IMG/VR virus record: IMGVR_UViG_3300003322_000571
Span: 124,001 to 188,000 of that record
DNA: 64,000 nucleotides
Reading direction: 5' to 3' (one strand)
Part shown: positions 11,400 through 27,446 of the stretch, in pieces
Numbering within the stretch: position 1 is the stretch's first letter
Layout: the number at the start of each line of letters is the position of its first letter
Position numbers and translations under genes: made by a program
Notes under the pieces: model-generated
Seen by the model: only the letters and a program-made list of their open reading frames with translations
Told to the model about the DNA's origin: nothing
Database searches by the model: none

Positions 11400-11487
11400 A
11401 AAGTTGTTGTCCGCTCTCACCGTCCATCCCCAGGTGTGCCTGTTCGAACGCATGTGTGTATTATCGCTGTTTTAGGGTGAAAGTCAA
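11400..11487 (-). ncRNA. Candidate sRNA family X copy 1 with promoter
   Basis: TTGACT-16-GATAAT then CATGCGTTCGA...GGGATGGACGGTGAGAGCG. Confidence 0.55.
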
Positions 11488-11550
11488 CGGGGCTGTTGAG
11501 TGAGTTGGGGTGCTTCTGCAATGTGTTGGTTTTATTGCAGGAGGTTGTTA

Positions 11551-11898
11551 ATGATTGTGACGAATGATGAGGGGTATTTGGTTGGTGATATTAAGGCTTC
11601 GATCGATTCGATTGTATCGTCTGTGCGTGGGAAGCCTGTAGTCGCTTCGTGGTTGGATAGTGTGTGGCCTGATGGGAAGCCGGTGACGTTTGCTGATTTT
11701 GATCCTGCTGTTGGTGATGTGCCGTGTTATCGGTATAGCGCTTGTATTGCAGGGGAGGGGTATGCTGCGTATGCGAAGCGGGTGGTAGAGGAGGTTAACG
11801 ATGTGCTCATTGTTGAGGACATTGTTACTGCGTCGCATGCTCGGCTGCATCCGTACAACGGTGGTTGGAAGTTGGAGTTGTATTTGCATCGCAAGTAA
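11551..11898 (+). CDS. Hypothetical protein, first gene of the rightward early region
   Basis: GGAGG RBS before ATG 11551. Confidence 0.7.
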   Translation: MIVTNDEGYLVGDIKASIDSIVSSVRGKPVVASWLDSVWPDGKPVTFADFDPAVGDVPCYRYSACIAGEGYAAYAKRVVEEVNDVLIVEDIVTASHARLHPYNGGWKLELYLHRK

Positions 11899-11922
11899 TT
11901 GTACGCGTGTTGTCGATTCTGC

Positions 11923-11951
11923 TTGACTTTCTTGCCTGAAGTGAGTATCGT
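11923..11951 (+). promoter_or_regulatory. Sigma70-type early promoter
   Basis: TTGACT-17-TATCGT. Confidence 0.55.
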
Positions 11952-11983
11952 TGCCTTATTGTAATAGCTAGCGGGAGCTAGAG

Positions 11984-12331
11984 ATGAAGCTTGCACCGAA
12001 GGATCCGTACGCTGCGATGTTGTTTGCGACTGTGCCTGGATGTCAGAACATTCGTTCTCGGAAGCAGATGACGGCGCAGGAGCTGAAGGCTCTCAGTCAT
12101 GAGGAGATTCCTCAACACTGGAAGAGGATTCAGAAGCTGGAGAAGCAGCTGAGCTCGCGTCAGCGGAAGATCGTTGATCGTTTGCTGCATGTGTATGCGA
12201 ACAATCTCGGTGCTGCTGAGGAGCTGGGGTTGCCGAAGCGGATGCAGAAGTTTCTCGAGGCGCATATCAATGCGTACTACATCGAGATGGCGATCGATCA
12301 TGATCGTCTGATGCTTGCCAACATGTACTGA
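11984..12331 (+). CDS. Hypothetical protein
   Basis: RBS plus upstream promoter. Confidence 0.75.
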   Translation: MKLAPKDPYAAMLFATVPGCQNIRSRKQMTAQELKALSHEEIPQHWKRIQKLEKQLSSRQRKIVDRLLHVYANNLGAAEELGLPKRMQKFLEAHINAYYIEMAIDHDRLMLANMY

Positions 12332-12338
12332 GGCAATC

Positions 12339-12536
12339 ATGGCACTCTCTGACGAACAGAAGACGCATATCGAGCAGGTCGTCACTTTGTTGAAGAGCGG
12401 CGAGCTGTCGTGGTATGACGTTGACATGGACGATATGTCTGACGACAAGCAGGCGTACTTCGATCAATTGCATGCGGTGTGGCAGGACGAAGCGATTCGT
12501 GGTCCTGCTTTTCTTGCAATGGTCAACAAGGGTTAA
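12339..12536 (+). CDS. Small acidic protein
   Basis: GAGG RBS. Confidence 0.7.
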   Translation: MALSDEQKTHIEQVVTLLKSGELSWYDVDMDDMSDDKQAYFDQLHAVWQDEAIRGPAFLAMVNKG

Positions 12537-12538
12537 TC

Positions 12539-12895
12539 ATGGCAGTATTTCAAGTGCGGCCGTCTTCGCATGACGGCCTAACAGGTAACTGGTCGGATCT
12601 GACGATGATTGCTGAATCGTTGGACGACATCAAGGCAGCGGTGTGTGCTCACCCTCGGGATGAGGAAGCGTACCGTCGTTGTCCTGCGTATGAGATCGCT
12701 GAGATCGTTCGCGGCTGGATCGGTCAAGGACCGATGCGGAATGGCACTCCGTACGATACGTGGGATGAGATTGACTTTGGCTTCATGTCGCTTGAGCATG
12801 ATGTGCTGAAGATCAGCTACTACACTGGCGGTCGTGGCCGTGATCATGAGATCGTTGAGCGGCGTGGTTATATCACGTTCATGCCGGGGAACTGA
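12539..12895 (+). CDS. Hypothetical protein
   Basis: Operonic ORF. Confidence 0.7.
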   Translation: MAVFQVRPSSHDGLTGNWSDLTMIAESLDDIKAAVCAHPRDEEAYRRCPAYEIAEIVRGWIGQGPMRNGTPYDTWDEIDFGFMSLEHDVLKISYYTGGRGRDHEIVERRGYITFMPGN

Positions 12896-12896
12896 T

Positions 12897-13175
12897 ATGT
12901 TCAAGTACACGTTCGATCCTGCATCGAAGTCCGCTCTCGATCATGAGAAGGCTTCGTACGTCGACGGTCCGTATCCGAAGGGTCGGAAGCCGTTCCCGGT
13001 TCGTCGTCTGCTTCAGCAGCAGATGGAGATCGCACATCGTCCTGGCGCTGATCGTATCTTGGACGCAGCGGTCAGCACTGTCTATTATTCCGACAAGAAA
13101 GTCAAGCATATTCCTGTGGAGGGCGTGCTGATTCCCGCGTTCGTTTTCAAGTGCGAGCCCGTTGCCAAGACGTGA
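12897..13175 (+). CDS. Hypothetical protein
   Basis: Operonic ORF. Confidence 0.7.
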   Translation: MFKYTFDPASKSALDHEKASYVDGPYPKGRKPFPVRRLLQQQMEIAHRPGADRILDAAVSTVYYSDKKVKHIPVEGVLIPAFVFKCEPVAKT

Positions 13176-13218
13176 CAGCTCGTTGATACTTGCCGTACTG
13201 AATTAATAGGAGCCAGCG

Positions 13219-13536
13219 ATGGACGTTCAACTGCATGACTGGGCGCACGCTTTCTTCGGTGTGCTCAAGCCGTTGCTGAAGCGTATCGACAAGACGGAGG
13301 ACGAAGCGATCTCTGATCTGATCTTCGGCGACGAAGGTCTGGTGATGCCGAAAGATGTCGTTGACATCTTCATTGTCCGCCTGGTCGACCAGAAGTTCGT
13401 CGAGTTTAATCCTGGAGATGAGACGGACCGTCGTGAGTACACCGATCCGTTGCATCCGCAACGTGGTCTGATGATCGTCGGACATCCGGAAGAGCCCGGT
13501 GTGTTCTGTGTGTCGTTCTTCAACTACGCACTGTGA
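13219..13536 (+). CDS. Hypothetical protein
   Basis: AGGAG RBS. Confidence 0.75.
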   Translation: MDVQLHDWAHAFFGVLKPLLKRIDKTEDEAISDLIFGDEGLVMPKDVVDIFIVRLVDQKFVEFNPGDETDRREYTDPLHPQRGLMIVGHPEEPGVFCVSFFNYAL

Positions 13537-13546
13537 TGTGACCTAG

Positions 13547-13575
13547 TTGACGTTTGGCAAAGAAAGCTGGATACT
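13547..13575 (+). promoter_or_regulatory. Sigma70-type promoter
   Basis: TTGACG-17-GATACT; short wobble hairpin AAGCTGG/CTGGCTT. Confidence 0.7.
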
Positions 13576-13605
13576 GGCTTCACTGTCTAAACAAAGGAGT
13601 CCGAG

Positions 13606-14364
13606 ATGGACATCTCTCCGAAGCTGCACAAGATGAACATCAACCACCGGTCGGCGGCTGCTGCTGTGCAGCACACGCGAGATTGGATCGAGGGGATTGT
13701 GGACGGCGACATCGTCGTCAACAACAAGGTGATCGTCGATCCCGCACCTCCGAGCCGTGATGTGATCGCCAACGCGGTCTACTTCGTCAACCATCTGCTC
13801 AGCACCGAGCTGACCACGCAACAACTGGTCGAGCACTACGAGTTGCACAAGACGGAGTCGCGGGCGAAAGCCGATTCGTGGGCGATCACGTTCGCACAGG
13901 CGATCGTCGAGCAACTGGTCAAGGCTGACTGTGTGCTGCTCGCTGGTTCGACCGCTGATCTGATCAAGATGGCGTGGGAACGCGCAACGAAGTCGATCAC
14001 GTGCGCCCGCTATCCCGAAGTGTTCTCGAAGGCAGAAGTCGCTTCGACCACTGGCGGTGAAGTCAAGGCTGTTTCCGACATGGTCGATGTCAAGGTCGAA
14101 GTGAAGGCCGATGGCAAGATCAAGAAGGGCGGCAAGGAGCAGCTGGCGATCGCATTGTACCAGAAGTACGTCGCGTCGCTCAACGGTGCACCGTACGTCA
14201 ACCAGGACTTCATCAAGATCCTCGTCGAAGAGGCTGGCATGACCAAGCCGGGTGCAACGACGTACAACTACAACATGAAGAAGAAGTTCGGTGGTCAGAT
14301 CGAGAAGCGTGCGGACGCTGAGCCGGTTCGCATGCTGGCAGCGCCCAAGAAGAAGGCTGCTTGA
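13606..14364 (+). CDS. Family B protein (C-terminal E.G.T..GA.TY helical domain)
   Basis: EEAGMTKPGATTYNYNMKK; strongly C/G-biased codons. Confidence 0.8.
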   Translation: MDISPKLHKMNINHRSAAAAVQHTRDWIEGIVDGDIVVNNKVIVDPAPPSRDVIANAVYFVNHLLSTELTTQQLVEHYELHKTESRAKADSWAITFAQAIVEQLVKADCVLLAGSTADLIKMAWERATKSITCARYPEVFSKAEVASTTGGEVKAVSDMVDVKVEVKADGKIKKGGKEQLAIALYQKYVASLNGAPYVNQDFIKILVEEAGMTKPGATTYNYNMKKKFGGQIEKRADAEPVRMLAAPKKKAA

Positions 14365-14368
14365 CCTG

Positions 14369-14411
14369 TTGATCAAAATGGTTAGTGAGGGGATGATCTC
14401 TTCACTAACCA
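14369..14411 (+). promoter_or_regulatory. Hairpin-centred promoter
   Basis: TTGATC-17-GATGAT; 14-bp stem 14379-14411 with 2 G-T pairs. Confidence 0.7.
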
Positions 14412-14430
14412 ACTACATCTGTTAGGAGAG

Positions 14431-14895
14431 GTGATGAAATATGTCGTCAGTGTCGCGATCAGCGACCAGATTCCTCATGTCAAGACCACTCTGGCGCGGT
14501 CGGGGATCATCGATGTTTCGTGCGAGCACCAGACCGCTAAGCGTGCAATGGATGATTTCGCCGCAGTGATGACGGCGATTGCTGATCATCCGGGTTCTGG
14601 TCCGTACTGGCAGGTCAACCCGATGCAAGTACTGGACGCGATCCTCAGTCCTCCGCAGGAGAACGAGCAATCGAACGTCAAGATCGAGTTCGAGGCACGT
14701 GACGCCAACGGTGGTCCCACGTTCTCGCTGATCACCGTGGCGCTGAAAAGCGAAGAAGGCGAGACGGCGAACACGACCAATTCGTGCATGCATGCGATGG
14801 CATGCAAGATGCTCGACGTGCTCGAAACCATGATCCACGGTGGTGACCTCCCGACTGAGGAAGCTTCGATCCCTGAAGGTGAAACGATTCACTGA
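14431..14895 (+). CDS. Hypothetical protein
   Basis: GGAGAGG RBS. Confidence 0.75.
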   Translation: MMKYVVSVAISDQIPHVKTTLARSGIIDVSCEHQTAKRAMDDFAAVMTAIADHPGSGPYWQVNPMQVLDAILSPPQENEQSNVKIEFEARDANGGPTFSLITVALKSEEGETANTTNSCMHAMACKMLDVLETMIHGGDLPTEEASIPEGETIH

Positions 14896-14897
14896 TC

Positions 14898-15179
14898 ATG
14901 ATCAAGCTGACCGTTAAGGCAGACTACAAACACCGCCCTCCGGCGGTGTTTTTCGTTACCGGTTACATCGACATGGTGTTCGTGAGCTGGAAGATCCTGT
15001 GGGCACTTACACGGGCTGCTTCCAAGCAGAAAGCGAACATTGTACAGGAAGGTGAGAGCGAAAGCTACGGAGTGCACACACTTCACTTCGTACAAAAGGA
15101 CGGGAACAATTCAACTCCGTTCATTAGCATTGATTTCGAAGAAGTTGACGAGGTCCCCGACGGTTGGGAGCCCACGTAG
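14898..15179 (+). CDS. Hypothetical protein
   Basis: Coupled ORF followed by terminator. Confidence 0.65.
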   Translation: MIKLTVKADYKHRPPAVFFVTGYIDMVFVSWKILWALTRAASKQKANIVQEGESESYGVHTLHFVQKDGNNSTPFISIDFEEVDEVPDGWEPT

Positions 15180-15195
15180 CACACAGCGCCCAGAC

Positions 15196-15228
15196 AAAAG
15201 CCCACCATTGTGTGGGCTTTTTCTTTTG
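15196..15228 (+). terminator. Intrinsic terminator
   Basis: AAAAGCCCAC/GTGGGCTTTT plus T tract. Confidence 0.85.
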
Positions 15229-15471
15229 CAGCTATACAAAAATGCTCCATTGGTTTGAATGCTTGCTCTGAAGACAAACGAGCAGAGACGGATGTCGTTT
15301 CTGCATGATAATGAAATTGTGTGAGCGCAGGAGTCGCTCGGGTCTGTGCGCGATAAGCGTGTCGTTAAGACGGTTTAAAGTGCTCTGTTGTCAAGACTCG
15401 ACAGATGACTGATAGTTCACTCACTGGTTCGGAAACGCAACCGCAGGGACACAAGCAAGAAACTGCTCCTG

Positions 15472-15500
15472 TTGACAAGTTACCCTGAATCAGAGATAGT
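15472..15500 (+). promoter_or_regulatory. Sigma70-type promoter
   Basis: TTGACA-17-GATAGT. Confidence 0.75.
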
Positions 15501-15551
15501 TACCGCACTGAATCAAGTTTCTCTCAACCACCTGTAACAAGGAGTTTCATC

Positions 15552-16196
15552 ATGACCCAAGCCCAAGCCGCTCTGTCGTCCGCCATCGCCCTCCTGGCCA
15601 ACACCGATGCGTTCCGCCCCGTGGCGGCCGACGCCGGTGAAGTCAAGGCGCTCGTCGGCGACAAGATCGTGTTCCTGACCGCCGACAAGAAGGAATCCGA
15701 CGTCCTGACCGTCGTGATGGTCAAAAAGAAGGTGACCAACACCGTGTCCGACGTGAACGGCGAGAAGATGAGCGTGCCGATGACGCACTTCGGCGCCGAC
15801 GACATCGAGCTGGAAGACGGCACGTTCATCCGCCTGGTCAAGTCGGTGATCCCGCCGAAGCCGGGCAAGAAGGGCCGCGGCCGCGTCGAAGGCGCGCCGA
15901 CCAAGGCTGACATCTGCCGCGGCCTGTTCATCGCCGCCCCGGATGCGCCGAAGGCCGTGATGTGCAAGCTGTTCCAGTCGGAAGCCGGCTGCACCCGGAT
16001 GGGCGCGAACACGTACTTCCTGTCGATCGCCAAGGCCTACGCGGCCGGCAAGCTGAAGGACCTCGTTCTGGACGAAGGCGTCGTCGCCCTCGTGAAGAAG
16101 GCGATCGAGGCGGCGCGCGCCGAAGCGGAAGCCCAGGCGGCGGAAGCGTCGGCCGAGACCACGACCGAGCAGTCGACCGAAGAAGCCTCCGCCTGA
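15552..16196 (+). CDS. Family B protein
   Basis: SEAGCTRMGANTYF; acidic Ala/Glu tail. Confidence 0.85.
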   Translation: MTQAQAALSSAIALLANTDAFRPVAADAGEVKALVGDKIVFLTADKKESDVLTVVMVKKKVTNTVSDVNGEKMSVPMTHFGADDIELEDGTFIRLVKSVIPPKPGKKGRGRVEGAPTKADICRGLFIAAPDAPKAVMCKLFQSEAGCTRMGANTYFLSIAKAYAAGKLKDLVLDEGVVALVKKAIEAARAEAEAQAAEASAETTTEQSTEEASA

Positions 16197-16278
16197 TCCT
16201 TGATCGGGTGAAGTGAGAGGGTAGGGGGCATAGCCCCCTTCCTTCGTTGTGTGCATCCACCATTCTACTAGTAAACAT

Positions 16279-16629
16279 ATGCCGATCCTCTCTCAAGATG
16301 AACTGGTGCAACTGATGGTTGCGAATCTGGAAGACGGTACGAAGGAGATCCGCTTCGGTGATCATCTCCGTCCCTATGGAATGATGGATGCGCTCGTGAT
16401 TCGTCGTATCCGCACACCCGCAGGAATCCAGTACTGCGTCCGTGAAACGTCGTACCGCGGCGAAGGCAGCGGCATCTACGACCACGGTGCCGTCGAGATT
16501 GCGAAGTGGGCACGCCGGATCGCTGAACGGTACATGAAACCGCATCAGTCTGTTGTTGTTCAAAAGGTTATCGCTGAAGCTCGTGGCCTCAATGAGCCGA
16601 GCTTCTACGTGACCGAATGCAACACCTGA
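16279..16629 (+). CDS. Hypothetical protein
   Basis: ORF from MPILSQ. Confidence 0.65.
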   Translation: MPILSQDELVQLMVANLEDGTKEIRFGDHLRPYGMMDALVIRRIRTPAGIQYCVRETSYRGEGSGIYDHGAVEIAKWARRIAERYMKPHQSVVVQKVIAEARGLNEPSFYVTECNT

Positions 16630-17298: not shown

Positions 17299-17309
17299 TC
17301 GTTTCTAGT

Positions 17310-17705
17310 GACCACTAGTAAACATTAAGCCGGGCTTCGTGAGGTGGCCCACCGATGCAGTAATCTTTTGTACGCTCAACATCAGATGACATACGGCATG
17401 AAGGTGCTCAAGTAGCACCTGGGAGGCGCGCCGGCCGGACATACCGCGCCGTGGCCGGCGCGCAACTCCCAAACCTGCACAGCGGCAAGCATTTCGCCCC
17501 GCAACCGACAACCAGTGAGTCACGACATAGTGCGTTACGCATAGGGCTTTTGACATGTGCCCGCCCCGAAGTCTAACCGATGGCCATAGGGTCGCTCGCC
17601 GGGATGAAAGCGAGCACACACTAACCAAGTGGTAACCGAGTGCGCTGGCGACCGGAATTGCTGGCGCATTCAACATTTCCAGACTTCGAATTCAGACTAG
17701 AAAGG
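17310..17705 (+). ncRNA. Structured non-coding RNA or long leader candidate
   Basis: Several strong stems (17402-17420, 17421-17470, 17638-17671 with 4 G-T pairs). Confidence 0.45.
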
Positions 17706-17710
17706 TCTAC

Positions 17711-17893
17711 ATGTCCCGCAATTCCAAGAACGCCAAGCGCCACATCGCCGAGAAGGCCGCCTCCACCCAGCGCGTGAAGGGCGACAAGGGCCCCACCAAG
17801 ACGACGCCGAAGCACGGCAAGAAGAAGGCGTGGTGGCAGCTGTTCCCGTCGTACGAGGCGTACATCAAGGGCGCCAAGAAGCAGAAGGACTAA
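17711..17893 (+). CDS. Small Lys-rich basic protein
   Basis: GPTKTTPKHGKKKAWWQ; strong codon bias. Confidence 0.8.
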   Translation: MSRNSKNAKRHIAEKAASTQRVKGDKGPTKTTPKHGKKKAWWQLFPSYEAYIKGAKKQKD

Positions 17894-17923: not shown

Positions 17924-17950
17924 AAAGGGCTCAACAGAGCCCTTTTGTTT
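17924..17950. terminator. Bidirectional-type intrinsic terminator
   Basis: AAAGGGCTC-AACA-GAGCCCTTT. Confidence 0.8.
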
Positions 17951-18045
17951 TGTCCGCACTATAAGACAGTGAGGCGCTCTCGCCGTCCATCCCGCGTTAG
18001 CTTCGAATCATGTGGTGATTATATTCGAAAGAGGGTAAAAGTCAA
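17950..18045 (-). ncRNA. Candidate sRNA family X copy 2 with promoter
   Basis: TTGACT-16-TATAAT then CATGATTCGA...GGGATGGACGGCGAGAGCG, running into the terminator. Confidence 0.6.
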
Positions 18046-18108: not shown

Positions 18109-18139
18109 TGACTCATCAGTTAACAACCACGAGAACAAA

Positions 18140-18445
18140 ATGACGTTCGAACAAGAGCTGTCGGTCATCGAACAACTGTTCGGTGTCAAGATCGAAATCC
18201 AAGCCGCGCCGGGTTCGCCTGTGTGGTACACCTTCAGTGGCCGACAGTTGACGGTCGAATGCATCGAGGGCATCATCACGCAGAACAGCGGGGTGCTTGA
18301 GTGGCAAGACCCGTTGTCGTGGCATTGCAACAACAACGACAATGTCGCGTACCTGGTGGTCAAGCTGACCGACACCGATGAAGATGTCGTGTATGATCGG
18401 CTGTTCGCGTTCGACTTGACCGACAACGAATTCCACATTGTCTGA
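18140..18445 (+). CDS. Hypothetical acidic protein
   Basis: ORF from MTFEQEL. Confidence 0.7.
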   Translation: MTFEQELSVIEQLFGVKIEIQAAPGSPVWYTFSGRQLTVECIEGIITQNSGVLEWQDPLSWHCNNNDNVAYLVVKLTDTDEDVVYDRLFAFDLTDNEFHIV

Positions 18446-21926: not shown

Positions 21927-21970
21927 CAGTCCTCTTCTTTTGTGTTCGTCAATCTTTGAAAGGAATCATC

Positions 21971-22426
21971 ATGAGCAACGTCACCGAAAAGGGCCTCATC
22001 GTTCTGAAGGCCGCTTCCAAGCACAACACGCGCGAGAAGATCGCCCGCCGCCTCGGCCAAAGCGTCGCCCAAGTCAACGGCGCCCTGACCGGTCTCAAGC
22101 GCAACGGCCTGATCGAGATCGATGCCGAAGGCGTGATCACCGTGACCCCCGACGCCGCTCCCTACCTGAGCAAGCGCGCCGGTGGCACCGCTGAACGCGC
22201 CACCCGCACCAACACGAAGATGGCCGCTGCGCGTCGCCTGTTCGACAAGTACGCGTCGAAGGAAGGTCGTGGCGGTCTGATCGCTCGCTTCATGAAGGAG
22301 ATCGGCCTGACCGAGAAGGGCGCGTCGACCTACTTCCAGACGATCCGTGTGCAGGCCGGTGTGCCGGCGGGCGCTTTCCAGCGTGCTCCGCGCAAGCCTT
22401 CGACCGTTTCGCGCAAGACGTCGTGA
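21971..22426 (+). CDS. Family B protein with N-terminal HTH
   Basis: REKIARRLGQSVAQVNGALTGLKRNGLI (winged-HTH-like) plus KEIGLTEKGASTYFQ. Confidence 0.8.
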   Translation: MSNVTEKGLIVLKAASKHNTREKIARRLGQSVAQVNGALTGLKRNGLIEIDAEGVITVTPDAAPYLSKRAGGTAERATRTNTKMAAARRLFDKYASKEGRGGLIARFMKEIGLTEKGASTYFQTIRVQAGVPAGAFQRAPRKPSTVSRKTS

Positions 22427-22446
22427 ACCCTCACCTCGTCCGCTGC

Positions 22447-22475
22447 AAGGGGAGCCATCGGCTCCCCTTTTTTAT
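22447..22475 (+). terminator. Intrinsic terminator
   Basis: AAGGGGAGCC/GGCTCCCCTT plus T tract. Confidence 0.85.
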
Positions 22476-22719
22476 TTGCTGCGTTCTCTCGTGACATGCT
22501 GTGTTGCTTATTGATTATTGAATCAGTGAACTGATTGTCATGATAAAGATTTCTAAACACAACGCATCCATGCAATTTTTGCTGCAAAAAGATGGTGGAG
22601 AAAACCCCCTAGCAGGCAAAAATTGCTAGACACTTTTATATAGAGCACCCGCTCTATCCTGTTGTCTTCTCGGACATCTGGTAGTATCATTCTCCCATCG
22701 TTAAACAAACGAGGCAGAC

Positions 22720-23073
22720 ATGGCCAAGATCGTTACGAAAGATTCCCTGCGAGACCTGCTGCTGAGCTCGCCTCAAGACAAGCAGGTCCGAATCATCGGT
22801 CGCGCTCTCGTTCGGATCATGGAGCGGCAAACGGAAGCCGAAAAGAGCCTGAAGATGACAACCGATTCGAACAACATCGGTTTCACCAGTGCAGATGCGA
22901 AGACGGGAACCAAGTCAGCGGAGTACTTCAAGCGGACTGGCCGTCTGATGCCGTTCGCGTTCGAGCGGTGGATCAGTGCTGACAGCACCGGCTATCCTCG
23001 GATCTGCCGCTACCATCGTCAACTCAACGAAGTCGCTGAGGCAAAAGCCGAAAGTGCCCAGTTGACTCTGTAA
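22720..23073 (+). CDS. Hypothetical protein
   Basis: GAGG RBS; N.IGFTSADA..G motif. Confidence 0.8.
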   Translation: MAKIVTKDSLRDLLLSSPQDKQVRIIGRALVRIMERQTEAEKSLKMTTDSNNIGFTSADAKTGTKSAEYFKRTGRLMPFAFERWISADSTGYPRICRYHRQLNEVAEAKAESAQLTL

Positions 23074-23098
23074 CCAAATGGGAGTATTATACTCCCAT
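23062..23098 (+). promoter_or_regulatory. Hairpin promoter class A
   Basis: TTGACT-17-TATTAT inside ATGGGAGTA-TTA-TACTCCCAT. Confidence 0.85.
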
Positions 23099-23116
23099 CA
23101 ATCAACGGAGTGCGAA

Positions 23117-23410
23117 ATGCAATTCTCGAAGGAACAGCTGATCTACATCGCGAGCAGCCTCGGCAACATGGACGTTGACTTCATGAAGCAGCTGGCGTGG
23201 GGAATGGTCGCCAATCACGCGGAAGTGATGGCGGAAATCTCCGAAAGCAGCGACATCCATACGCTGCCGAACACGAAGGACACCAAGGAACACGTCAAGG
23301 AGTACCTGTCCGACATGTTCCCGGAAATCCTCACGAAGCTGAAGGAGGAGATCGACGCGTGCCCGATCAACGTCAAGTACTCGTGGAGCGTCGACGTCAA
23401 GATGGAATGA
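23117..23410 (+). CDS. Acidic hypothetical protein
   Basis: GGAG RBS. Confidence 0.75.
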   Translation: MQFSKEQLIYIASSLGNMDVDFMKQLAWGMVANHAEVMAEISESSDIHTLPNTKDTKEHVKEYLSDMFPEILTKLKEEIDACPINVKYSWSVDVKME

Positions 23411-23527
23411 TGGACGGGGCCGGCTCAGGGGCAAGGGAGGGAGGAGGTGCCTGAGCGGTCAGGTGGCGATCCCGTCTCTCCCTGACCAGAGTCCGTCTAT
23501 AATACCGGAATCCATGCAGGAATGCAA
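23410..23527 (-). ncRNA. Candidate sRNA with anti-SD loop, with promoter
   Basis: TTGCAT-17-TATTAT; two 7-bp stems, loop CACCTCCTCCCTCCCTTGCC. Confidence 0.5.
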
Positions 23528-23639
23528 CGCCCATTAATAATGAGCTTGCAGTCCAGTATGGTATTGCTCTTTCTGTTGACTGTCTGATTTGTGCACTTAA
23601 TAATCTGCACAACTTAACAACCAACAGAAAGGGTCAATC

Positions 23640-23816
23640 ATGATCGTCGACAACTTCACGCGAGATATCCCCCAAGAAGACGAAAACCTGTCGCCGGCAC
23701 TGGGTGCGATGATGGGTGTGCTCGCCATGCCGCACCAGTACAGCCGTTTCGTCAACGACACGATGCTGTCGCTCAACATGCAGTGCCCGCAGTCTGCGCA
23801 CGTGATGGAAAAGTGA
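23640..23816 (+). CDS. Small hypothetical protein (58 aa)
   Basis: AAGGG RBS; fills the cassette. Confidence 0.6.
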   Translation: MIVDNFTRDIPQEDENLSPALGAMMGVLAMPHQYSRFVNDTMLSLNMQCPQSAHVMEK

Positions 23817-23820
23817 ACTG

Positions 23821-23858
23821 TTGACTTGTCGGCCGGATGGGAGTATTATGCTCCCATC
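23821..23858 (+). promoter_or_regulatory. Hairpin promoter class A
   Basis: TTGACT-17-TATTAT; GATGGGAGTA-TTA-TGCTCCCATC (T-G wobble). Confidence 0.85.
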
Positions 23859-23879
23859 GGTTAACAACCAGGAACACAA

Positions 23880-24275
23880 ATGTTCAAGACCACCCTGCAG
23901 AACATCCACGAAGTCGACGAGAGCGATTTCGGCTACGGACCGCACGTGTACGGCCTACTGCTCGAAGCGCAGGCCGAAGAGCTGGAAGTGACCGTCGTGC
24001 AACGTGTAATCGACAACGGCAACCCCGCGCACGACAATTACGACATCGTGCTCGATAACGGCCTGAAGGTCGATGCGGTGAGTGGTTACCACCTTGCCGA
24101 CATTCACAACTTCGTGGAGAATACGCACGAGTCGCAGTTCTGCCTCGCTGTGCAACATGGTGTCGATTTCGATCACGGTGTGTGGTCTGAACGGATCGAG
24201 TCCATGCTGCGCGATGCGGAGCAGAATCCGCATATTTCCATCTCGTACGAAACGACGTACGCCATTTCCAAGTGA
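23880..24275 (+). CDS. Acidic hypothetical protein
   Basis: AGGA RBS. Confidence 0.75.
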   Translation: MFKTTLQNIHEVDESDFGYGPHVYGLLLEAQAEELEVTVVQRVIDNGNPAHDNYDIVLDNGLKVDAVSGYHLADIHNFVENTHESQFCLAVQHGVDFDHGVWSERIESMLRDAEQNPHISISYETTYAISK

Positions 24276-24283
24276 AGGTCAAC

Positions 24284-24529
24284 ATGAAAAAGCACAACGG
24301 TTTCACGCTGATTGAACTGTTGATCGTTCTCGCGATCATCGGTATCCTGCTGGCAGTGGCGTTGCCTGCATGGCACAACTACCGCAACAACACCGCAGAA
24401 CCGAGCGGCCGCTACGGGCAGATCGGGCACGACCAGCCGCAAGCAGAATACGAATGCCGCGCTGGCGTTGTGATGAAACGCGACGGCAAGGCGCTGAAGT
24501 CGAGCAACGGCTCGATCGTGACCTGCTAA
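24284..24529 (+). CDS. Short type IV pilin-like protein
   Basis: MKKHNG/FTLIELLIVLAIIGILLAVALP prepilin motif with E5; C-terminal Cys pair. Confidence 0.9.
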   Translation: MKKHNGFTLIELLIVLAIIGILLAVALPAWHNYRNNTAEPSGRYGQIGHDQPQAEYECRAGVVMKRDGKALKSSNGSIVTC

Positions 24530-24549
24530 TACAAGTTACCTCCCTGTTT

Positions 24550-24590
24550 GGGCCGGGTTGAGCGCAAGCTCCCCGGCTCGTTTTTTATTC
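24550..24590 (+). terminator. Intrinsic terminator
   Basis: GGGCCGGG..GAGC-GCAA-GCTC-CCCGGCTC plus T tract. Confidence 0.8.
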
Positions 24591-24630
24591 CGAATCCAGC
24601 GCAGCAAACACACCTTCCCACTTTCCAAAT

Positions 24631-24659
24631 AGCATACGGCAAACTAGATGGTTTGGCAA
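24631..24659 (-). promoter_or_regulatory. Antisense sigma70-type promoter
   Basis: TTGCCA-17-TATGCT on the minus strand. Confidence 0.5.
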
Positions 24660-24725
24660 GTGTGGAAAGCCCTATTGTCCGTCTATCTCGTTTGGTGTAT
24701 ACTTGGTCATCAAGTGGAGATTTAG

Positions 24726-24851
24726 ATGCGACTCGTTGCTTACGTACTGATCCTTGGTTTTGCGTCGGGGTTGCTCGCACGCAATCCGTACATCGGTGCG
24801 TTGGCGGGAGTTGTGTGCTGGATCGTTGACACAATCATCAACAGGGAGTAA
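24726..24851 (+). CDS. Small membrane peptide (41 aa)
   Basis: GGAG RBS; MRLVAYVLILGFASGLLA... Confidence 0.55.
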   Translation: MRLVAYVLILGFASGLLARNPYIGALAGVVCWIVDTIINRE

Positions 24852-24853
24852 TC

Positions 24854-25048
24854 ATGGCACTCGTCATCACAATCATTTCCGCACTGATCCTTGTGATCGG
24901 CGGCATCGGTGCAATCGTTGGCGTTCTCGTTGGCGCAGCGTGGTGGGCGGGAGCGCTCACTGCGCTGATCAGCACGGTCGTGTTCATTATCATCCTGGTC
25001 GTCAGCCTGCTCGTGCTGGGATTCGCCAAGATGGACTCGTTGATCTGA
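24854..25048 (+). CDS. Very hydrophobic small membrane protein
   Basis: Two long TM helices. Confidence 0.75.
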   Translation: MALVITIISALILVIGGIGAIVGVLVGAAWWAGALTALISTVVFIIILVVSLLVLGFAKMDSLI

Positions 25049-25075
25049 ACAGCGAGACAGGTTACAATTGATCCC

Positions 25076-25327
25076 ATGAGTGGATATCTTGGTAACCCGG
25101 ACGCAGAGTCCGAACACGCACTGATCCTCGCTGAGAACGGGATCGATGCGGCACGTGCAATGTTGGCAGGTCCTGTTCTGGAAGACTGTCAGAACTGCGA
25201 TGAGCCGATCGATCCGAAGCGAGTCGCTGCGCTCCGTGCAAACGGCATGAAGTGCATGTACTGCATTATTTGCCAATCGAAGTTTGACGCTGCACCAAAG
25301 ATCAAAATGCTTGACCGCATCCTGTAA
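25076..25327 (+). CDS. TraR/DksA-type C4 zinc-finger protein
   Basis: CQNCDEPIDPKRVAA...CMYCIICQ; no DksA N-terminal extension. Confidence 0.85.
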   Translation: MSGYLGNPDAESEHALILAENGIDAARAMLAGPVLEDCQNCDEPIDPKRVAALRANGMKCMYCIICQSKFDAAPKIKMLDRIL

Positions 25328-25365
25328 GTGTGGGATAGTAGTCACATCAACAACTGAGGTGCAAC

Positions 25366-25626
25366 ATGCCTGCGATCAACATCTCCAACGAACTCGTCCG
25401 TGCCATCAATGCTGTGTGGGACTACATCGGTTCCGACTGCGAGCAGTGCGCCAATGAGTGCGGTGAAGAACTGACGAACGAGATGGCCATTGAGAGCTGC
25501 ATCGACGCCGATCGCCTGAAGACGAACGGTCACAAAGCTGCTGACAAGGAACTCCATGCGCTGATCGAGCAGCACGGTTACGGCCCCGTTGCCAAAGCCC
25601 TCGAGAAGAAGATCAGCCTGGCCTGA
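25366..25626 (+). CDS. Hypothetical protein
   Basis: GAGG RBS. Confidence 0.75.
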   Translation: MPAINISNELVRAINAVWDYIGSDCEQCANECGEELTNEMAIESCIDADRLKTNGHKAADKELHALIEQHGYGPVAKALEKKISLA

Positions 25627-25630
25627 TCTG

Positions 25631-25661
25631 TTGACAAAGCTAGTGTCCTACGGGACACTAG
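25631..25661 (+). promoter_or_regulatory. Hairpin promoter
   Basis: TTGACA-17-GACACT; CTAGTGTCC-TACG-GGACACTAG. Confidence 0.65.
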
Positions 25662-25691
25662 TAAACATCAACACAGTCACAGGTAAACATC

Positions 25692-25913
25692 ATGCCGATC
25701 ATCACTGCCCACGAGCTCGCTCGTCAACTGCTTGCGCAAGGCGACTACGAAGTGTGCTTGCTTGACGAAGGTGCAACGCACGGCTGGAGTATCGGCTCTG
25801 TTGTCTCTTGCCAAGGTCGGAGTGATGATTCCGAGCTGACGAAACCAATGGTCGTCATCACGATCGGCAACGGTCTGACGGAACTTCTTCCAAAACCGGA
25901 GCGTATGCAATGA
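25692..25913 (+). CDS. Hypothetical protein
   Basis: Cassette ORF. Confidence 0.7.
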   Translation: MPIITAHELARQLLAQGDYEVCLLDEGATHGWSIGSVVSCQGRSDDSELTKPMVVITIGNGLTELLPKPERMQ

Positions 25914-26212
25914 CAAGCGAAATGTTCAACAATGAGCCGACCGAGGAGCGGAAGGCGAAGCTTGAGCAGTTGCTCGGGCGGATGGAAGCTCCCGACGTGA
26001 TCGCGAAGCAATGTCAGATGTCGCACGCTGCGGTGTTCGCTCTGATCAACGCTCGGTCGTACACGGGGTTCAACAAGTGGTGGGCCCAGCAGGTCAGCGG
26101 CAGGCGTGCGATGCTGATCAACGACAAGTGGGCACTCGCAGAGGCTGCATATAGCGCAGGCCGTGAGGCACTCGCCGAAGAGATCGCGAAGTTGCGTGAT
26201 CAGCCGTTGTAA
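25910..26212 (+). CDS. Hypothetical protein
   Basis: Coupled ORF. Confidence 0.7.
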   Translation: MTSEMFNNEPTEERKAKLEQLLGRMEAPDVIAKQCQMSHAAVFALINARSYTGFNKWWAQQVSGRRAMLINDKWALAEAAYSAGREALAEEIAKLRDQPL

Positions 26213-26309
26213 TGTAGCAACTACAACACTCCAAAGGCAACAGGGCACTGCCCTGTTGCCTTCGCTGGTCAATTGTGCGATACTGGCTTCATTGTAATAA
26301 GGAGCTGAT

Positions 26310-26606
26310 ATGAGCCGACCGACGTCAGAAGAGATCCGCGCATTCGCTGCTCGTATGGAGCAGAACGACTTCTTTGAGCTCGTTGCTCATCATATGCTGT
26401 TCGTCGAGCAGGCGATCGCGACCGATGCGTTGGCAACAGAGCTCGACGCTGACGATACGTACAATCGCTCGTTGGCTCAGGAGCTGTTCCACGACCCAGA
26501 GTACCTCGCAAACTGCTGTGAGGCAACGCTGTCTGGCATGGGGTTTGAAGAAGCTGTCGTCGAGCAGCTGAAGCTGCTCGCTCCGTCGTACGTTCGGCCC
26601 CGTTGA
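26310..26606 (+). CDS. Acidic hypothetical protein
   Basis: AAGGAG RBS. Confidence 0.75.
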   Translation: MSRPTSEEIRAFAARMEQNDFFELVAHHMLFVEQAIATDALATELDADDTYNRSLAQELFHDPEYLANCCEATLSGMGFEEAVVEQLKLLAPSYVRPR

Positions 26607-26657
26607 TCAGTTTGGTCATTTGGGCGATACTGGACGCATTCAATCAAGGAGCGAGCT

Positions 26658-26983
26658 ATGAAGTACTGGAACGGCGTTGGCCGCCATCAGGCTGCGTACG
26701 ACGAGGTCAGCAAGCTGATCCCCGTCGAAGGTGCGTGCAATGACGCACAGACGACGAACAAGTCGCTCGACCTCCTGCGTCGTGCTACTACGATCTGTAC
26801 AACAACGGCCTGTGCAATCGCGCCAAGGAGTTCCGCACGATCTTCGGGTTTGGCGGTGAGAGTATCGCCAAGAACTTCGCAGATGTCAACGGGATGAACC
26901 TCCTTGACGAGAAGATGGATGTCCTGATCGAGAAGGCGTGCGTCGAACAAGGTCTCGCCCACTTGACATATCGCAAGAGCTGA
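26658..26983 (+). pseudogene. Frameshifted gene
   Basis: MKYWNG...LLRRA continues in the -1 frame from 26786 as YYDLYNNGLCNRAKEF... to TGA 26983. Confidence 0.65.
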
Positions 26984-27021
26984 GGGATACTGGCTTCACT
27001 GTCAACCACTGGAGAGCAAAC

Positions 27022-27315
27022 ATGGCGTACGTGATCTACAACGAAAAGACGTGCAAGCGATACGAGACCGAGCGTCGCACCGCGTCGTGGGCTCAGAAGG
27101 GCAGCGCCAAGAGCGTGCTGACCAAGGCGATCAAGAGCGGCGACATCAAGAACGGAGACGACTGGAAGGTCGGCACGTACGAAGAGTGGCAAGCGAACGA
27201 TCGCGACATCGAAGTGATCAGCGCGATGGACGGCAAGACCGTCTGCAAGATCAAGGCGAGCGAGAAGGGCAATCGCGTCAGCGACCCGAGCATGGAAGGT
27301 TACTGGACGATGTAA
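27022..27315 (+). CDS. Hypothetical protein
   Basis: GGAGAG RBS, own promoter TTGACA..GATACT. Confidence 0.8.
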   Translation: MAYVIYNEKTCKRYETERRTASWAQKGSAKSVLTKAIKSGDIKNGDDWKVGTYEEWQANDRDIEVISAMDGKTVCKIKASEKGNRVSDPSMEGYWTM

Positions 27316-27319
27316 GAAC

Positions 27320-27349
27320 AAGGAGCCTACGGGCTCCTTTTCGTTTTGT
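27320..27349. terminator. Bidirectional-type intrinsic terminator
   Basis: AAGGAGCC-TACG-GGCTCCTT plus T tract. Confidence 0.8.
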
Positions 27350-27446
27350 CAACTGGCAAAGTCGTTGTTCCGCTCTCGCTGTCCATCCCCAGGGTGCCTG
27401 ATCGAACGCATGCTGCTAGTATCGCATAGCTGTCCGTCGAAGTCAA
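27350..27446 (-). ncRNA. Candidate sRNA family X copy 3 with promoter
   Basis: TTGACT-17-GATACT then CATGCGTTCGA...GGGATGGACAGCGAGAGCG. Confidence 0.6.

What the first reader, a model, noticed from the sequence alone, without database searches (positions are those of the whole stretch)
11400..27446. Three dispersed copies of an unannotated sRNA with its own antisense promoter
Seen: a 19-nt core, GGGATGGAC(G/A)G(T/C)GAGAGCG on the minus strand, occurs at 11412-11430, 17975-17993 and 27371-27389 (17/19 identical). Each copy is preceded by CATG(C)RTTCGA and a sigma70 promoter (TTGACT-16/17-GATAAT/TATAAT/GATACT). Two copies run straight into bidirectional terminators (17924, 27320), giving RNAs of about 90 nt. 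No reading frame is conserved, because the indels scramble it. GGGAUGGA lies in a loop closed by different but complementary flanks, followed by a Y-GAGA-G tetraloop. Established: CsrA/RsmA binds ANGGA in loops. Inference: a multicopy phage early sRNA acting as a protein sponge (RsmA/CsrA-type) or a decoy for a host RNA-sensing defence.
Basis: partly seen in the sequence, partly recalled or inferred. Interest (0 to 1): 0.85.

Follow-up and report, generated by a model that had tools for sequence, protein, structure and literature searches.

The report
Widespread promoter-attached structured phage small RNA
The three repeats are copies of a real, previously uncatalogued small phage RNA that carries its own strong promoter and occurs in at least 46 other uncultured phage contigs; its function is unknown, and the best lead is that it mimics a CRISPR guide RNA.

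Summary
The 19-nt core occurs three times on the minus strand (0.02 expected by chance). Each copy sits 24-29 nt downstream of a sigma70-type promoter, and copies 2 and 3 end at hairpin terminators.

The same module occurs in at least 46 other IMG/VR phage contigs, as 40 distinct sequences, often 2-3 copies per contig. It is absent from Rfam and from cultured phages.

Family covariation supports a 5' H-type pseudoknot with UUCGAA in its first loop, followed by a G-rich box GGGG(A/G)UGGACG..GAG. A start codon is not conserved.

The CsrA-sponge idea has no specific support. Two leads emerged:
- **CRISPR mimic.** The box matches the 3' stem strand plus 5' handle of type I-E CRISPR repeats. The layout (promoter, repeat-like unit, 37-39 nt, hairpin) resembles a crRNA mimic of the Racr/Cracr kind. 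However, the Cas6 hairpin is missing and handle position -2 is never C.
- **Replication origin.** In seven related loci from about four sequence groups the RNA is transcribed into DnaA-box clusters. Copy 1 likewise points into a repeat-rich, origin-like region.

Verdict: a genuine new phage sRNA family. The most likely mechanism is a trans-acting decoy, with moderate-to-low confidence.

The parts
11460..11487 (-). Promoter of copy 1 (TTGACT-16-GATAAT)
   Evidence: The distance from the -10 box to the core is the same as in 17 other group-A family members.
11404..11459 (-). Copy 1 of the RNA element. Pseudoknot S1 pairs 11450-11452 with 11437-11439; S2 pairs 11440-11442 with 11431-11433. The G-box core is 11412-11430.
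   Evidence: Covariance-model hit of 63.5 bits; core match; helices from family covariation.
11342..11369 (+). Convergent plus-strand promoter (TTGACT-16-GATAAT) facing copy 1. Its transcript would be antisense to the element and lead into the gene starting at about 11551.
   Evidence: The same face-to-face arrangement, with the -10 end at +55 to +63, is seen in 8 family instances.
10260..11340 (.). Repeat-rich non-coding region into which copy 1 is transcribed. It lies at the divergence of the leftward and rightward gene clusters and at the cumulative GC-skew minimum. It is a candidate origin or control region.
   Evidence: Sequence; repeats; skew; ORF and GC3 map.
18018..18045 (-). Promoter of copy 2 (TTGACT-16-TATAAT, 11 of 12)
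17967..18018 (-). Copy 2 of the RNA element (core 17975-17993). The pseudoknot is degenerate in this copy.
   Evidence: Covariance-model hit of 42.6 bits with unpaired S1 positions; core.
17924..17945 (.). Hairpin ending the copy 2 RNA and the convergent plus-strand gene 17711-17893. The stem starts at the 38th nt after the AUGGACGG octamer.
27418..27446 (-). Promoter of copy 3 (TTGACT-17-GATACT, extended TG). It is back-to-back with the plus-strand promoter at 27450-27478.
27363..27417 (-). Copy 3 of the RNA element. S1 pairs 27408-27410 with 27395-27397; S2 pairs 27398-27400 with 27390-27392. The core is 27371-27389.
   Evidence: Covariance-model hit of 56.5 bits; core.
27320..27339 (.). Hairpin ending the copy 3 RNA and the convergent plus-strand gene at about 27022-27315. 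The stem starts at the 40th nt after the octamer.

Best explanation
The three sites are paralogous copies of a widespread, previously uncatalogued phage RNA module.

Anatomy. A strong host-type (sigma70) promoter fires almost directly into a conserved RNA of about 45 nt. The 5' end of this RNA is locked in a small H-type pseudoknot whose first loop carries UUCGAA. A near-invariant G-rich box follows, for which no covarying pairing was found: GGGG(A/G)UGGACG(G/U)(C/G)GAG.

The window copies. Copies 2 and 3 are self-contained genes for RNAs of about 92-98 nt. Each ends at a hairpin shared with the convergent plus-strand gene. Copy 1 fires into a repeat-rich non-coding region and faces the promoter of the rightward early operon.

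Proposed mechanism. I think the RNA is made immediately on infection and acts in trans as a stable decoy for a conserved host RNA-binding machine. The best candidate is the host type I-E CRISPR complex.
- The G-run plus the octamer AUGGACGG copies the 3' stem strand plus the 8-nt 5' handle of I-E repeats (...GYGGGG|AUGGACCG).
- A GUUC lies upstream of it, as in many I-E repeats.
- In the terminated copies a hairpin of 8-10 bp begins 38-40 nt after the octamer. In a I-E crRNA it begins at nt 38.
- On this reading the RNA would soak up Cascade subunits (Cas5/Cas7/Cas8) or misdirect them, like the known Racr and Cracr RNAs, but without needing Cas6 cleavage.

Shown: sequence, copy number, promoters, terminators, the pseudoknot covariation, family distribution, and the resemblance to I-E repeats.
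Inferred: transcription, action in trans, and any contact with Cas proteins.
For: - Family and promoters. The core is found in 46 other IMG/VR contigs as 40 distinct sequences. A promoter lies at a fixed distance in 37 of 44 instances, many matching 11-12 of 12 consensus positions.
- Pseudoknot. S2 is 99% paired and the three core S1 pairs are 70-93% paired (S1 as a whole, five pairs: 63.5%). All eight pairs show changes on both sides. The covariation score is 0.467, against at most 0.089 when partners are slid and 0.147 in shuffles.
- Stand-alone copies. Copies ending at a terminator occur in the window and in other contigs.
- Multi-copy. 2-3 copies per contig are common.
- I-E arrays. CRISPR arrays with 61-nt periodicity whose 29-nt repeat ends ...G(U/C)GGGGAUGGACCG are abundant in metagenomes. 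Some of these repeats begin GCGUUC or GUGUUC.
- Published precedent. [quoted passage not shown] A viral Cracr is described as a single repeat-like sequence, a spacer-like sequence and a rho-independent terminator (bioRxiv 10.1101/2024.10.29.618823).
- Geometry. The octamer-to-hairpin spacing is 38, 40, 39 and 40 nt in four terminated copies.
- Conservation. A nearly constant box of about 19 nt in phages whose shared proteins are only about 45-52% identical argues for a conserved external partner.
Against: - The I-E hairpin that Cas6e needs is absent. GAA replaces CCC, so the lower stem cannot form.
- Genuine I-E solitary repeats and mini-arrays in IMG/VR keep the hairpin and are not followed by the GAG(A/G)G part of the box.
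- Octamer position -2 is G or A in every one of more than 40 variants, and C in all arrays found. This looks like selection for something other than a perfect handle.
- In diverged copies the A of the octamer becomes G.
- 1,758 spacers from such arrays gave no full match to the window or to related loci.
- There is no enrichment of the post-octamer 'seed' in 120 I-E loci.
- Hosts are unknown. The nearest cultured relatives infect Xanthomonas, Stenotrophomonas and Erwinia.
- The resemblance was noticed post hoc. A 10-12-nt match to one of many repeat families is not overwhelming on its own.
- The association with origin-like DNA is not explained by this model.
- The invariance of GGGATGGAC and TCGA is partly by construction of the search patterns.
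Confidence: 0.3

Rival explanations
1. Origin-coupled RNA. The promoter and its structured, G-rich leader are part of the phage replication origin. The transcript runs into DnaA boxes or iterons. It either activates the origin by transcription, or forms a persistent RNA-DNA hybrid through the G-rich box that serves as a primer or helps unwinding, in the manner of ColE1 RNA II, T4 oriF/oriG, or transcriptional activation of the lambda origin. The stand-alone copies would be secondary start sites or would supply the RNA in trans.
For: - Clusters of 3-6 DnaA boxes, mostly exact TTATCCACA and often about 11 bp apart, lie 45-320 nt downstream of the element in 7 distinct loci from about 4 sequence groups. 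They never lie upstream. The background is 0.16 one-mismatch boxes per kb.
- L265 adds at least 12 ACCGGT repeats. L255 has GTAGCAC iterons. L109 has AAGTGTG repeats.
- Downstream DNA is more repeat-rich than upstream DNA (median 104.5 versus 45.5 of 600 nt; Wilcoxon p = 0.003).
- Copy 1 points into a repeat-rich non-coding region of about 1.1 kb at the cumulative GC-skew minimum.
Against: - Copies 2 and 3, and the short variants in L268, L249 and L027, stop at terminators within about 95 nt and have no repeats or DnaA boxes nearby.
- The non-G positions of the box (U, A, C) are as invariant as the G positions. That points to specific recognition rather than generic R-loop or G-quadruplex propensity.
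- Early control regions and origins often coincide in phages, so the association may be indirect.
- The loci are not phylogenetically independent.
Confidence: 0.22
2. A trans-acting small RNA with some other partner: a base-pairing regulator, an sRNA sponge, or a decoy for an unidentified host or phage protein. Possible partners include Hfq-dependent networks, a tRNA-elbow reader attracted by the T-loop-like UUCGA, or a phage protein.
For: - It has the same anatomy as classical sRNAs: a conserved 5' domain, an A-rich tract and a terminator hairpin.
- It is multi-copy with a diverged 3' part.
- UUCGA matches the canonical T-loop pentamer (my own knowledge, not tested).
- It has no Rfam family.
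Against: - Complementary sites in the window are not enriched: 7 non-self matches of at least 9 nt, against 2-12 in shuffles.
- A G-rich seed is unusual for sRNAs that target ribosome-binding sites.
- No candidate partner can be named from the data.
Confidence: 0.2
3. Cis-acting antisense or transcriptional-interference module. The strong minus-strand promoter opposes neighbouring plus-strand transcription. At copy 1 the promoters are face to face. At copies 2 and 3 it is convergent at the ends of operons, insulating or timing early operons. The RNA structure would only stabilise the antisense transcript.
For: - Eight instances have a convergent promoter at a fixed distance, with start sites about 76 bp apart.
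- Copies 2 and 3 and the short variants sit convergent to operon ends and share the terminator hairpin.
Against: - Interference needs no conserved sequence, yet the box is nearly invariant across unrelated genomes.
- The contexts differ (divergent, convergent, face to face) while the RNA stays the same.
Confidence: 0.1
4. RsmA/CsrA sponge. GGA motifs in the box would sequester the host translational repressor.
For: - GGGGAUGGAC contains two GGA motifs (AUGGA fits ANGGA).
- Many group-A copies carry a third GGA in GCGGA(C/A), 13-17 nt further on.
Against: - There are only 3-4 GGA per RNA.
- CsrA binding would not hold about 19 nt and the UUCGAA loop constant.
- No Rfam Csr/Rsm family matches, even at E up to 10.
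Confidence: 0.06
5. Promoter-proximal antitermination RNA of the HK022 put type, a DNA-level operator, or a tiny leader peptide (MDGES...).
For: - The position is promoter-proximal, and terminators follow directly.
- An AUG lies in the box.
Against: - The covariance model finds nothing in the HK022 early region.
- There are no genes behind copies 2 and 3.
- Dozens of plus-strand early promoters lack the element.
- Two interleaved helices covary, and the distance from the promoter varies between 26 and 70 nt, which argues against an operator.
- AUG becomes GUG, the ORF lengths range from 6 to 58 codons, and no Shine-Dalgarno sequence lies at a workable spacing.
Confidence: 0.05

Closest known systems
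RNA anti-CRISPRs (Racr; solitary repeat units, e.g. RacrIE1/2, RacrIF1; PMC10651486)
   Same: - Encoded by phages and solitary.
- Not next to cas genes.
- Directly downstream of its own strong promoter, giving a small non-coding RNA.
- The element shares the GUUC 5' flank and the YUGGGGAUGGAC.G 3' part with type I-E repeats.
   Different: - Racrs keep the whole repeat, including the Cas6 hairpin. Here the lower stem is destroyed and the centre is replaced by a pseudoknot that pairs with the RNA's 5' end.
- Handle position -2 is never C.
- A further 8-10 nt after the 'repeat' are conserved.
Viral crRNA-like regulatory RNAs (Cracr, e.g. CracrVA1, CracrIE array; bioRxiv 10.1101/2024.10.29.618823)
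   Same: - Architecture: promoter, single repeat-like unit, spacer-like stretch, rho-independent terminator.
- A conserved PAM-proximal 'seed' directly after the handle would fit the conserved GAG(A/G)G(C/U)G.
- Several copies per genome.
   Different: - No matching host cas or toxin promoter could be identified.
- No Cas6-processable hairpin.
- The spacer-like part is 37-39 nt rather than 21-24 nt.
CsrB/RsmY/RsmZ-type protein sponges
   Same: Small RNA with GGA motifs and its own promoter and terminator.
   Different: - Far fewer GGA motifs, and none in supported loops.
- Long invariant sequence and a pseudoknot.
- No Rfam match.
Origin-associated phage and plasmid RNAs (lambda oop RNA, ColE1 RNA II/RNA I, T4 oriF/oriG transcripts)
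   Same: - A short RNA driven by the host polymerase next to an origin-like region.
- Antisense or convergent to neighbouring genes.
- Face-to-face promoters with overlapping 5' ends in 8 loci.
- A G-rich stretch that could hold an RNA-DNA hybrid.
   Different: - No sequence or structural similarity to these RNAs.
- Stand-alone copies lie far from any origin-like DNA.
- The element is conserved across very different phages, whereas those RNAs are lineage-specific.
HK022 put antitermination RNA
   Same: A structured RNA at a fixed short distance from an early promoter, followed by a terminator.
   Different: - No similarity.
- No operon behind copies 2 and 3.
- Not present at the many plus-strand early promoters.

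Membership tests
Racr (RNA anti-CRISPR, solitary repeat unit) | Encoded on a phage or plasmid, solitary, not associated with cas genes | tested here: met
   There are three dispersed copies in a phage window. Sampled neighbouring ORFs had no Pfam or PHROG match and none is cas-like. There are no arrays of element-like repeats in IMG/VR.
Racr (RNA anti-CRISPR, solitary repeat unit) | Own promoter close upstream | tested here: met
Racr (RNA anti-CRISPR, solitary repeat unit) | Similarity in sequence and secondary structure to a CRISPR repeat over its length, including the Cas6-binding hairpin | tested here: not met
   Only the flanks match (GUUC, and YUGGGGAUGGAC.G). The CCC:GGG lower stem is absent. 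Genuine I-E units in IMG/VR keep the hairpin.
Racr (RNA anti-CRISPR, solitary repeat unit) | Binds Cas proteins and inhibits interference | not testable with these tools
   Needs phage challenge assays and pull-downs.
Cracr / crRNA-like regulatory RNA | Repeat-like unit, then a spacer-like stretch, then a second repeat or a terminator | tested here: met
   In copies 2 and 3, L268a and L249a the order is octamer, 37-39 nt, then a hairpin of 8-10 bp.
Cracr / crRNA-like regulatory RNA | At least 9 PAM-proximal nucleotides matching a host cas or toxin promoter, or the host CreR/CreA | tested here: inconclusive
   Seeds are not enriched in 120 metagenomic I-E loci. One spacer starting TCGAGAGCGC is an ordinary array spacer. 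A 21-nt hit beside casA in a Streptomyces plasmid lies in a coding-like fragment. The hosts are unknown.
Cracr / crRNA-like regulatory RNA | Cas-dependent processing to an 8-nt 5' handle | not testable with these tools
   Needs small-RNA sequencing with and without Cas6e. The sequence predicts no Cas6e hairpin.
CsrA/RsmA sponge RNAs | Many GGA motifs exposed in hairpin loops | tested here: not met
   There are 3-4 GGA per RNA. The helix proposed to close the loop has no covariation.
CsrA/RsmA sponge RNAs | Match to a described Csr/Rsm RNA family | tested here: not met
   Rfam gives no match at the gathering threshold or at E up to 10.
HK022 put-type antiterminator | Sequence or structure similarity to putL/putR, lying in front of an operon that contains terminators | tested here: not met
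   The covariance model finds nothing in HK022 24-32 kb. There are no genes behind copies 2 and 3.
Origin primer or activator RNA (ColE1 RNA II-like) | Transcribed towards and into the replication origin | tested here: inconclusive
   True for 7 loci with DnaA-box clusters, and plausible for copy 1. Not true for copies 2 and 3. No origin has been mapped.
Any Rfam 15 family | Score at or above the gathering threshold | tested here: not met
   Only two tRNAs are found in the window. Permissive scans of copies 1 and 2 and of L076 found nothing relevant. Control: Rfam also fails to flag a genuine I-E solitary repeat, so Rfam's silence says nothing about CRISPR-likeness.

The most novel reading that the evidence does not exclude
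A new kind of RNA anti-CRISPR. It would be a Cas6-independent crRNA mimic in which a 5' pseudoknot replaces the repeat hairpin and presents only the G-run and a deliberately imperfect 5' handle. With a crRNA-like spacing to a 3' hairpin, it would trap or misassemble type I-E Cascade subunits. It would be deployed in 2-3 copies from immediate-early promoters by many uncultured phages, jumbo phages included. An equally unexcluded alternative is a conserved RNA that couples early transcription to DnaA-dependent origin firing.
Probability: 0.22. Interest if true: 0.85.

Novelty: new variant of a known kind. Interest (0 to 1): 0.68.

Why it matters
Few phage-encoded small RNAs are conserved beyond one phage group. 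This module keeps a box of about 19 nt and a covarying pseudoknot across at least 47 contigs, from fragments of about 4-6 kb to contigs above 300 kb. That implies a conserved, important partner.

If the partner is the type I-E CRISPR machinery, the repertoire of RNA anti-CRISPRs would extend to mimics that need no Cas6 processing. Repeat-similarity searches would miss such mimics.

If the partner is the replication origin, it would be a new RNA component of DnaA-dependent phage origins.

Either way, the family offers:
- a clean covariance model for annotating uncultured phages;
- a marker of immediate-early promoters;
- a compact, testable RNA of about 95 nt.

Tried and rejected
- **Rfam.** The gathering threshold on the whole window and permissive scans on copies 1 and 2 and on L076 found nothing relevant.
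- **Cultured phages, plasmids, E. coli.** There was no megablast hit for the region. There was no blastn hit for canonical or diverged elements in 50,697 phage records. Only chance partial hits appeared in plasmids. E. coli genomes gave none.
- **Bacterial genome scan.** It returned only protein-coding ...PGMDGE... in high-GC bacteria, with gap lengths in steps of three.
- **Streptomyces plasmid.** A 21-nt identity next to casA looked exciting, but it lies in a coding-like fragment (RMDGESAL) between degenerate arrays. I treat it as chance.
- **Spacer in L366.** A spacer beginning TCGAGAGCGC is an ordinary spacer in a regular array.
- **Spacer matching.** 1,758 I-E spacers gave no full match against the window and the viral loci.
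- **Seed search.** No enrichment in 120 I-E loci.
- **Arrays of element-like repeats in IMG/VR.** Only collagen-like coding repeats and a 60-nt satellite were found.
- **Target search.** Complementarity to the box in the window is not above shuffles.
- **HK022 put and XacN1 19-32 kb.** No similarity.
- **Micro-ORF MDGES.** Rejected.
- **Minus-strand ORF 17305-17676 as a gene behind copy 2.** It has flat GC1/2/3 and no family hit, so it was rejected.
- **Strand assignment by G:U versus A:C counts.** Not decisive. The strand rests on the promoters.
- **Literature.** String searches for the box found nothing relevant, and it was not in the held supplementary tables of the Racr paper.

Full report
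**1. Observation**

The degenerate 19-mer GGGATGGACRGYGAGAGCG matches the minus strand at 11412-11430, 17975-17993 and 27371-27389. Dinucleotide-preserving shuffles give 0.02 matches. Reading the minus strand shows CATGCGTTCGA or CATGATTCGA just upstream of each core.

The consensus scan places minus-strand sigma70-like promoters at three sites:
- 11487-11460: TTGACT-16-GATAAT
- 18045-18018: TTGACT-16-TATAAT
- 27446-27418: TTGACT-17-GATACT

G+C-rich hairpins lie at 17924-17945 and 27320-27339. A covariance model built later finds exactly these three copies in the window, at 63.5, 56.5 and 42.6 bits. The next hit scores 14 bits.

**2. Setting**

The window is part of IMG/VR contig UViG_3300003322_000571, which is 350 kb long. 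Nothing similar exists at the DNA level among cultured phages. Some of its proteins resemble those of jumbo phages of Xanthomonas and Erwinia and of N4-like phages.

Genes from about 11.5 to 38 kb run on the plus strand behind dozens of sigma70-like promoters. Genes from about 5.4 to 10.3 kb run on the minus strand. The stretch between them, 10.26-11.5 kb, is non-coding and repeat-rich. It lies at the minimum of cumulative GC skew.

Copy 1 sits at the right edge of that stretch and points into it. It faces a plus-strand promoter at 11342-11369 that would read through it, in antisense, into the gene starting at about 11551.

Copies 2 and 3 lie in short gaps between plus-strand genes. Each is back-to-back with the next plus-strand promoter and convergent with the preceding gene, whose terminator hairpin it shares. 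No credible minus-strand gene follows them. The neighbouring ORFs match no family.

**3. The element is a widespread family**

Pattern scans of IMG/VR recovered the module in 46 further contigs, ranging from fragments of about 4-6 kb to 364 kb. They give 40 distinct sequences.

- In 37 of 44 distinct instances a sigma70-like promoter, often matching 11-12 of 12 consensus positions, lies at a fixed distance. The -10 box ends 26-29 nt before the core in 'group A', the window type. It ends 48-70 nt before the core in 'group B', which carries an extra leader.
- Model searches also found diverged second copies 0.1-3 kb away in six contigs. Two or three copies per genome is therefore common.
- In these diverged copies AUG becomes GUG. 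Three 'short' variants lack the pseudoknot but keep UCGAAC, a G-run and UGGACG..GAG, and at least two of them end in clear terminal hairpins.
- No Rfam family matches. No cultured phage, plasmid or E. coli genome carries the element.

Caveat: the patterns fixed GGGATGGAC and TCGA, so the invariance of those letters is partly by construction. The model-found copies show what is free to vary.

**4. Structure**

On the 40-sequence alignment two interleaved helices are supported:
- S1 joins the three to five nucleotides just 5' of G-UUCGAA to the loop of the following hairpin.
- S2 (CAG:CUG and its variants CUG:CAG, CGG:CCG, GAG:CUC) closes that hairpin.

All eight pairs show changes on both sides. 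S2 is 99% paired. The covariation score is 0.467, against at most 0.089 when partners are slid and 0.147 in shuffles. This is an H-type pseudoknot that engages the extreme 5' end of the group-A RNA.

Single-sequence folds are inconsistent between copies. Counts of G:U against A:C do not decide the strand, so the strand assignment rests on the promoters.

The micro-ORF that starts in the box varies from 6 to 58 codons and loses its AUG in diverged copies. It is not a gene.

**5. Lead one: type I-E CRISPR repeats**

From memory, the box resembled the end of the Thermus type I-E repeat. I tested this. Metagenomes hold many arrays with 61-nt periodicity whose 29-nt repeat ends ...G(U/C)GGGG|AUGGACCG. 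These include the exact Thermus repeat and variants that begin GUGUUC or GCGUUC.

Points of resemblance:
- The element reads G(C/G/U)GUUC-GAA-CAG...CUG-GGG-AUGGACGG. It shares the 5' flank, the 3' strand of the stem and seven of the eight handle nucleotides with these repeats.
- A viral Cracr is described as one repeat-like unit, a spacer-like stretch and a rho-independent terminator (bioRxiv 10.1101/2024.10.29.618823). That is the layout of copies 2 and 3.
- In four terminated copies the final hairpin (8-10 bp) starts at nt 38, 40, 39 and 40 after the octamer. In a I-E crRNA it starts at nt 38, after a 32-nt spacer and 5 nt.

Points against:
- The Cas6e hairpin cannot form, because GAA replaces CCC.
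- Genuine I-E solitary units and mini-arrays in IMG/VR keep the hairpin and lack the conserved GAG(A/G)G tail.
- Handle position -2 is never C in the element and always C in the arrays.
- There are no spacer hits, no seed enrichment in I-E loci and no arrays of element-like repeats.
- Two apparent hits turned out to be chance: a Streptomyces plasmid sequence beside casA, and one spacer.
- Rfam cannot arbitrate, because it also misses a genuine I-E unit.

**6. Lead two: replication origins**

- In seven distinct loci from about four sequence groups, clusters of 3-6 DnaA boxes lie 45-320 nt downstream of the element and never upstream. Most boxes are exact TTATCCACA, and they are often about 11 bp apart.
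- L265 adds a dozen ACCGGT repeats. L255 has GTAGCAC iterons. L109 has AAGTGTG repeats.
- Across 30 instances the downstream 600 nt are more repeat-rich than the upstream 600 nt (p = 0.003; the instances are not phylogenetically independent).
- Copy 1 fits this pattern. Copies 2 and 3 and the short variants do not.
- Eight instances, copy 1 among them, have a convergent promoter at a fixed distance. That gives face-to-face start sites about 76 bp apart.

**7. Other tests**

- Sequences complementary to the box are not enriched in the window.
- The HK022 early region and a XacN1 segment show no similarity.
- For CsrA, there are three or four GGA per RNA, none in a supported loop. A GGA motif would not hold UUCGAA and about 19 nt constant.

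**8. Judgement**

It is firmly shown that this is a real, conserved, promoter-attached structured RNA family, and that two of the window copies are stand-alone sRNA genes.

The mechanism is inferred. I rank the possibilities as follows:
- A trans-acting decoy with a crRNA-like layout aimed at type I-E Cas proteins: about 0.3. It explains both conserved blocks, the spacing, the promoter-proximal solitary architecture, the multi-copy immediate-early design and the cross-phage invariance.
- An origin-coupled RNA: about 0.22. It explains the strongest contextual signal but not the terminated copies.
- An sRNA with an unidentified partner: about 0.2.
- Interference-only, CsrA-sponge, put-like, operator or peptide models are less likely.

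The family is new relative to Rfam and to the literature searched.

Noticed in passing
window 22651-36333, e.g. 23051-23119, 28066-28134, 28935-29003: At least eight plus-strand early promoters share an extended module. It reads CCnGTTGAC, then 17 nt, then a -10 box embedded in a perfect palindrome (ATGGGAGTATTATACTCCCAT), followed by a Shine-Dalgarno sequence and ATG. A second class has GGGATACT or GGGATAGT. This looks like an operator for a dimeric regulator overlapping the -10 box of early genes.
   Followed up: partly
window 10260-11340: A non-coding region of about 1.1 kb holds many repeats. They include inverted CTTCTCCCTATAGGGG arms, several CCCTATAG(G/A) units, two 33-nt direct repeats (10374-10406 and 10473-10505) and two exact 16-mers GTGGGGAATAATCTAC. 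The region lies at the cumulative GC-skew minimum. It is a candidate origin, packaging or control region.
   Followed up: partly
window 17300-17700 (+): A gap of about 400 nt between two small plus-strand genes has no plausible ORF. It contains a long G+C-rich hairpin at about 17420-17470 (GGGAGGCGCGCCGGCC...GGCCGGCGCGC..CTCCC). It may be a structured non-coding RNA. Rfam gives no hit at the gathering threshold.
   Followed up: no
window 18131-18160 and 27831-27850 (+): The plus-strand genes next to copies 2 and 3 both begin ATGACGTTCGAACAAG (MTFEQ...). They therefore carry the 8-nt palindrome GTTCGAAC, which also forms the pseudoknot loop of copy 1. The 8-mer occurs only 4 times in the window (about 1 expected). 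This could reflect paralogy or a loop-loop target; I did not resolve which.
   Followed up: partly
window 27223-27241 (+): A 16-of-19 match to the core lies on the opposite strand, inside the plus-strand gene about 130 nt from copy 3. A read-through copy 3 transcript would contain its complement. It is probably chance (covariance-model E = 0.047).
   Followed up: partly
window 8396-9633 (-) and 43184-45243 (+): Two tandem arrays of paralogous genes: three copies at about 420-bp spacing on the minus strand, and four copies of about 200 aa at about 560-620-bp spacing on the plus strand.
   Followed up: no
window 60171-60243 and 60393-60467 (+): tRNA-Ala(TGC) and tRNA-Pro(TGG) genes.
   Followed up: yes
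window 42-1481 (-), 1570-2487 (+), 5693-6364 (-): A tail-fibre-like protein with an endosialidase-chaperone-type C-terminus, a NinI-like Ser/Thr phosphatase and a MazG-like pyrophosphatase lie at the left end of the window.
   Followed up: partly
L265:2735-3110; L257, L076, L247, L253, L274, L278 downstream of the element: Origin-like architecture in related phages. There are 3-6 mostly exact DnaA boxes, often about 11 bp apart. In L265 they are followed by at least 12 ACCGGT repeats and further promoters.
   Followed up: partly
Group-B loci, e.g. L248:7885-7910, L057:5597-5620, L123: A conserved imperfect palindrome of about 20 bp (GTTAGTTGGCGCCAACTAAC type) lies 22-23 nt after the box. It shows a compensatory variant (AGTAAGT...ACTTACT in L123). 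In some loci it is followed by a U-rich tail, so it may be the terminator of the group-B RNA or a protein-binding site.
   Followed up: no
L400, L412, L415, L433 and others: Genuine type I-E solitary repeats and two-repeat mini-arrays lie in viral contigs, some directly behind promoter-like sequences. They are candidates for canonical Racr/Cracr elements and are unrelated to the window phage.
   Followed up: no
L472:939-1608: A 60-nt tandem satellite (at least 8 copies) in a viral contig happens to contain GGGATGGACG.
   Followed up: no
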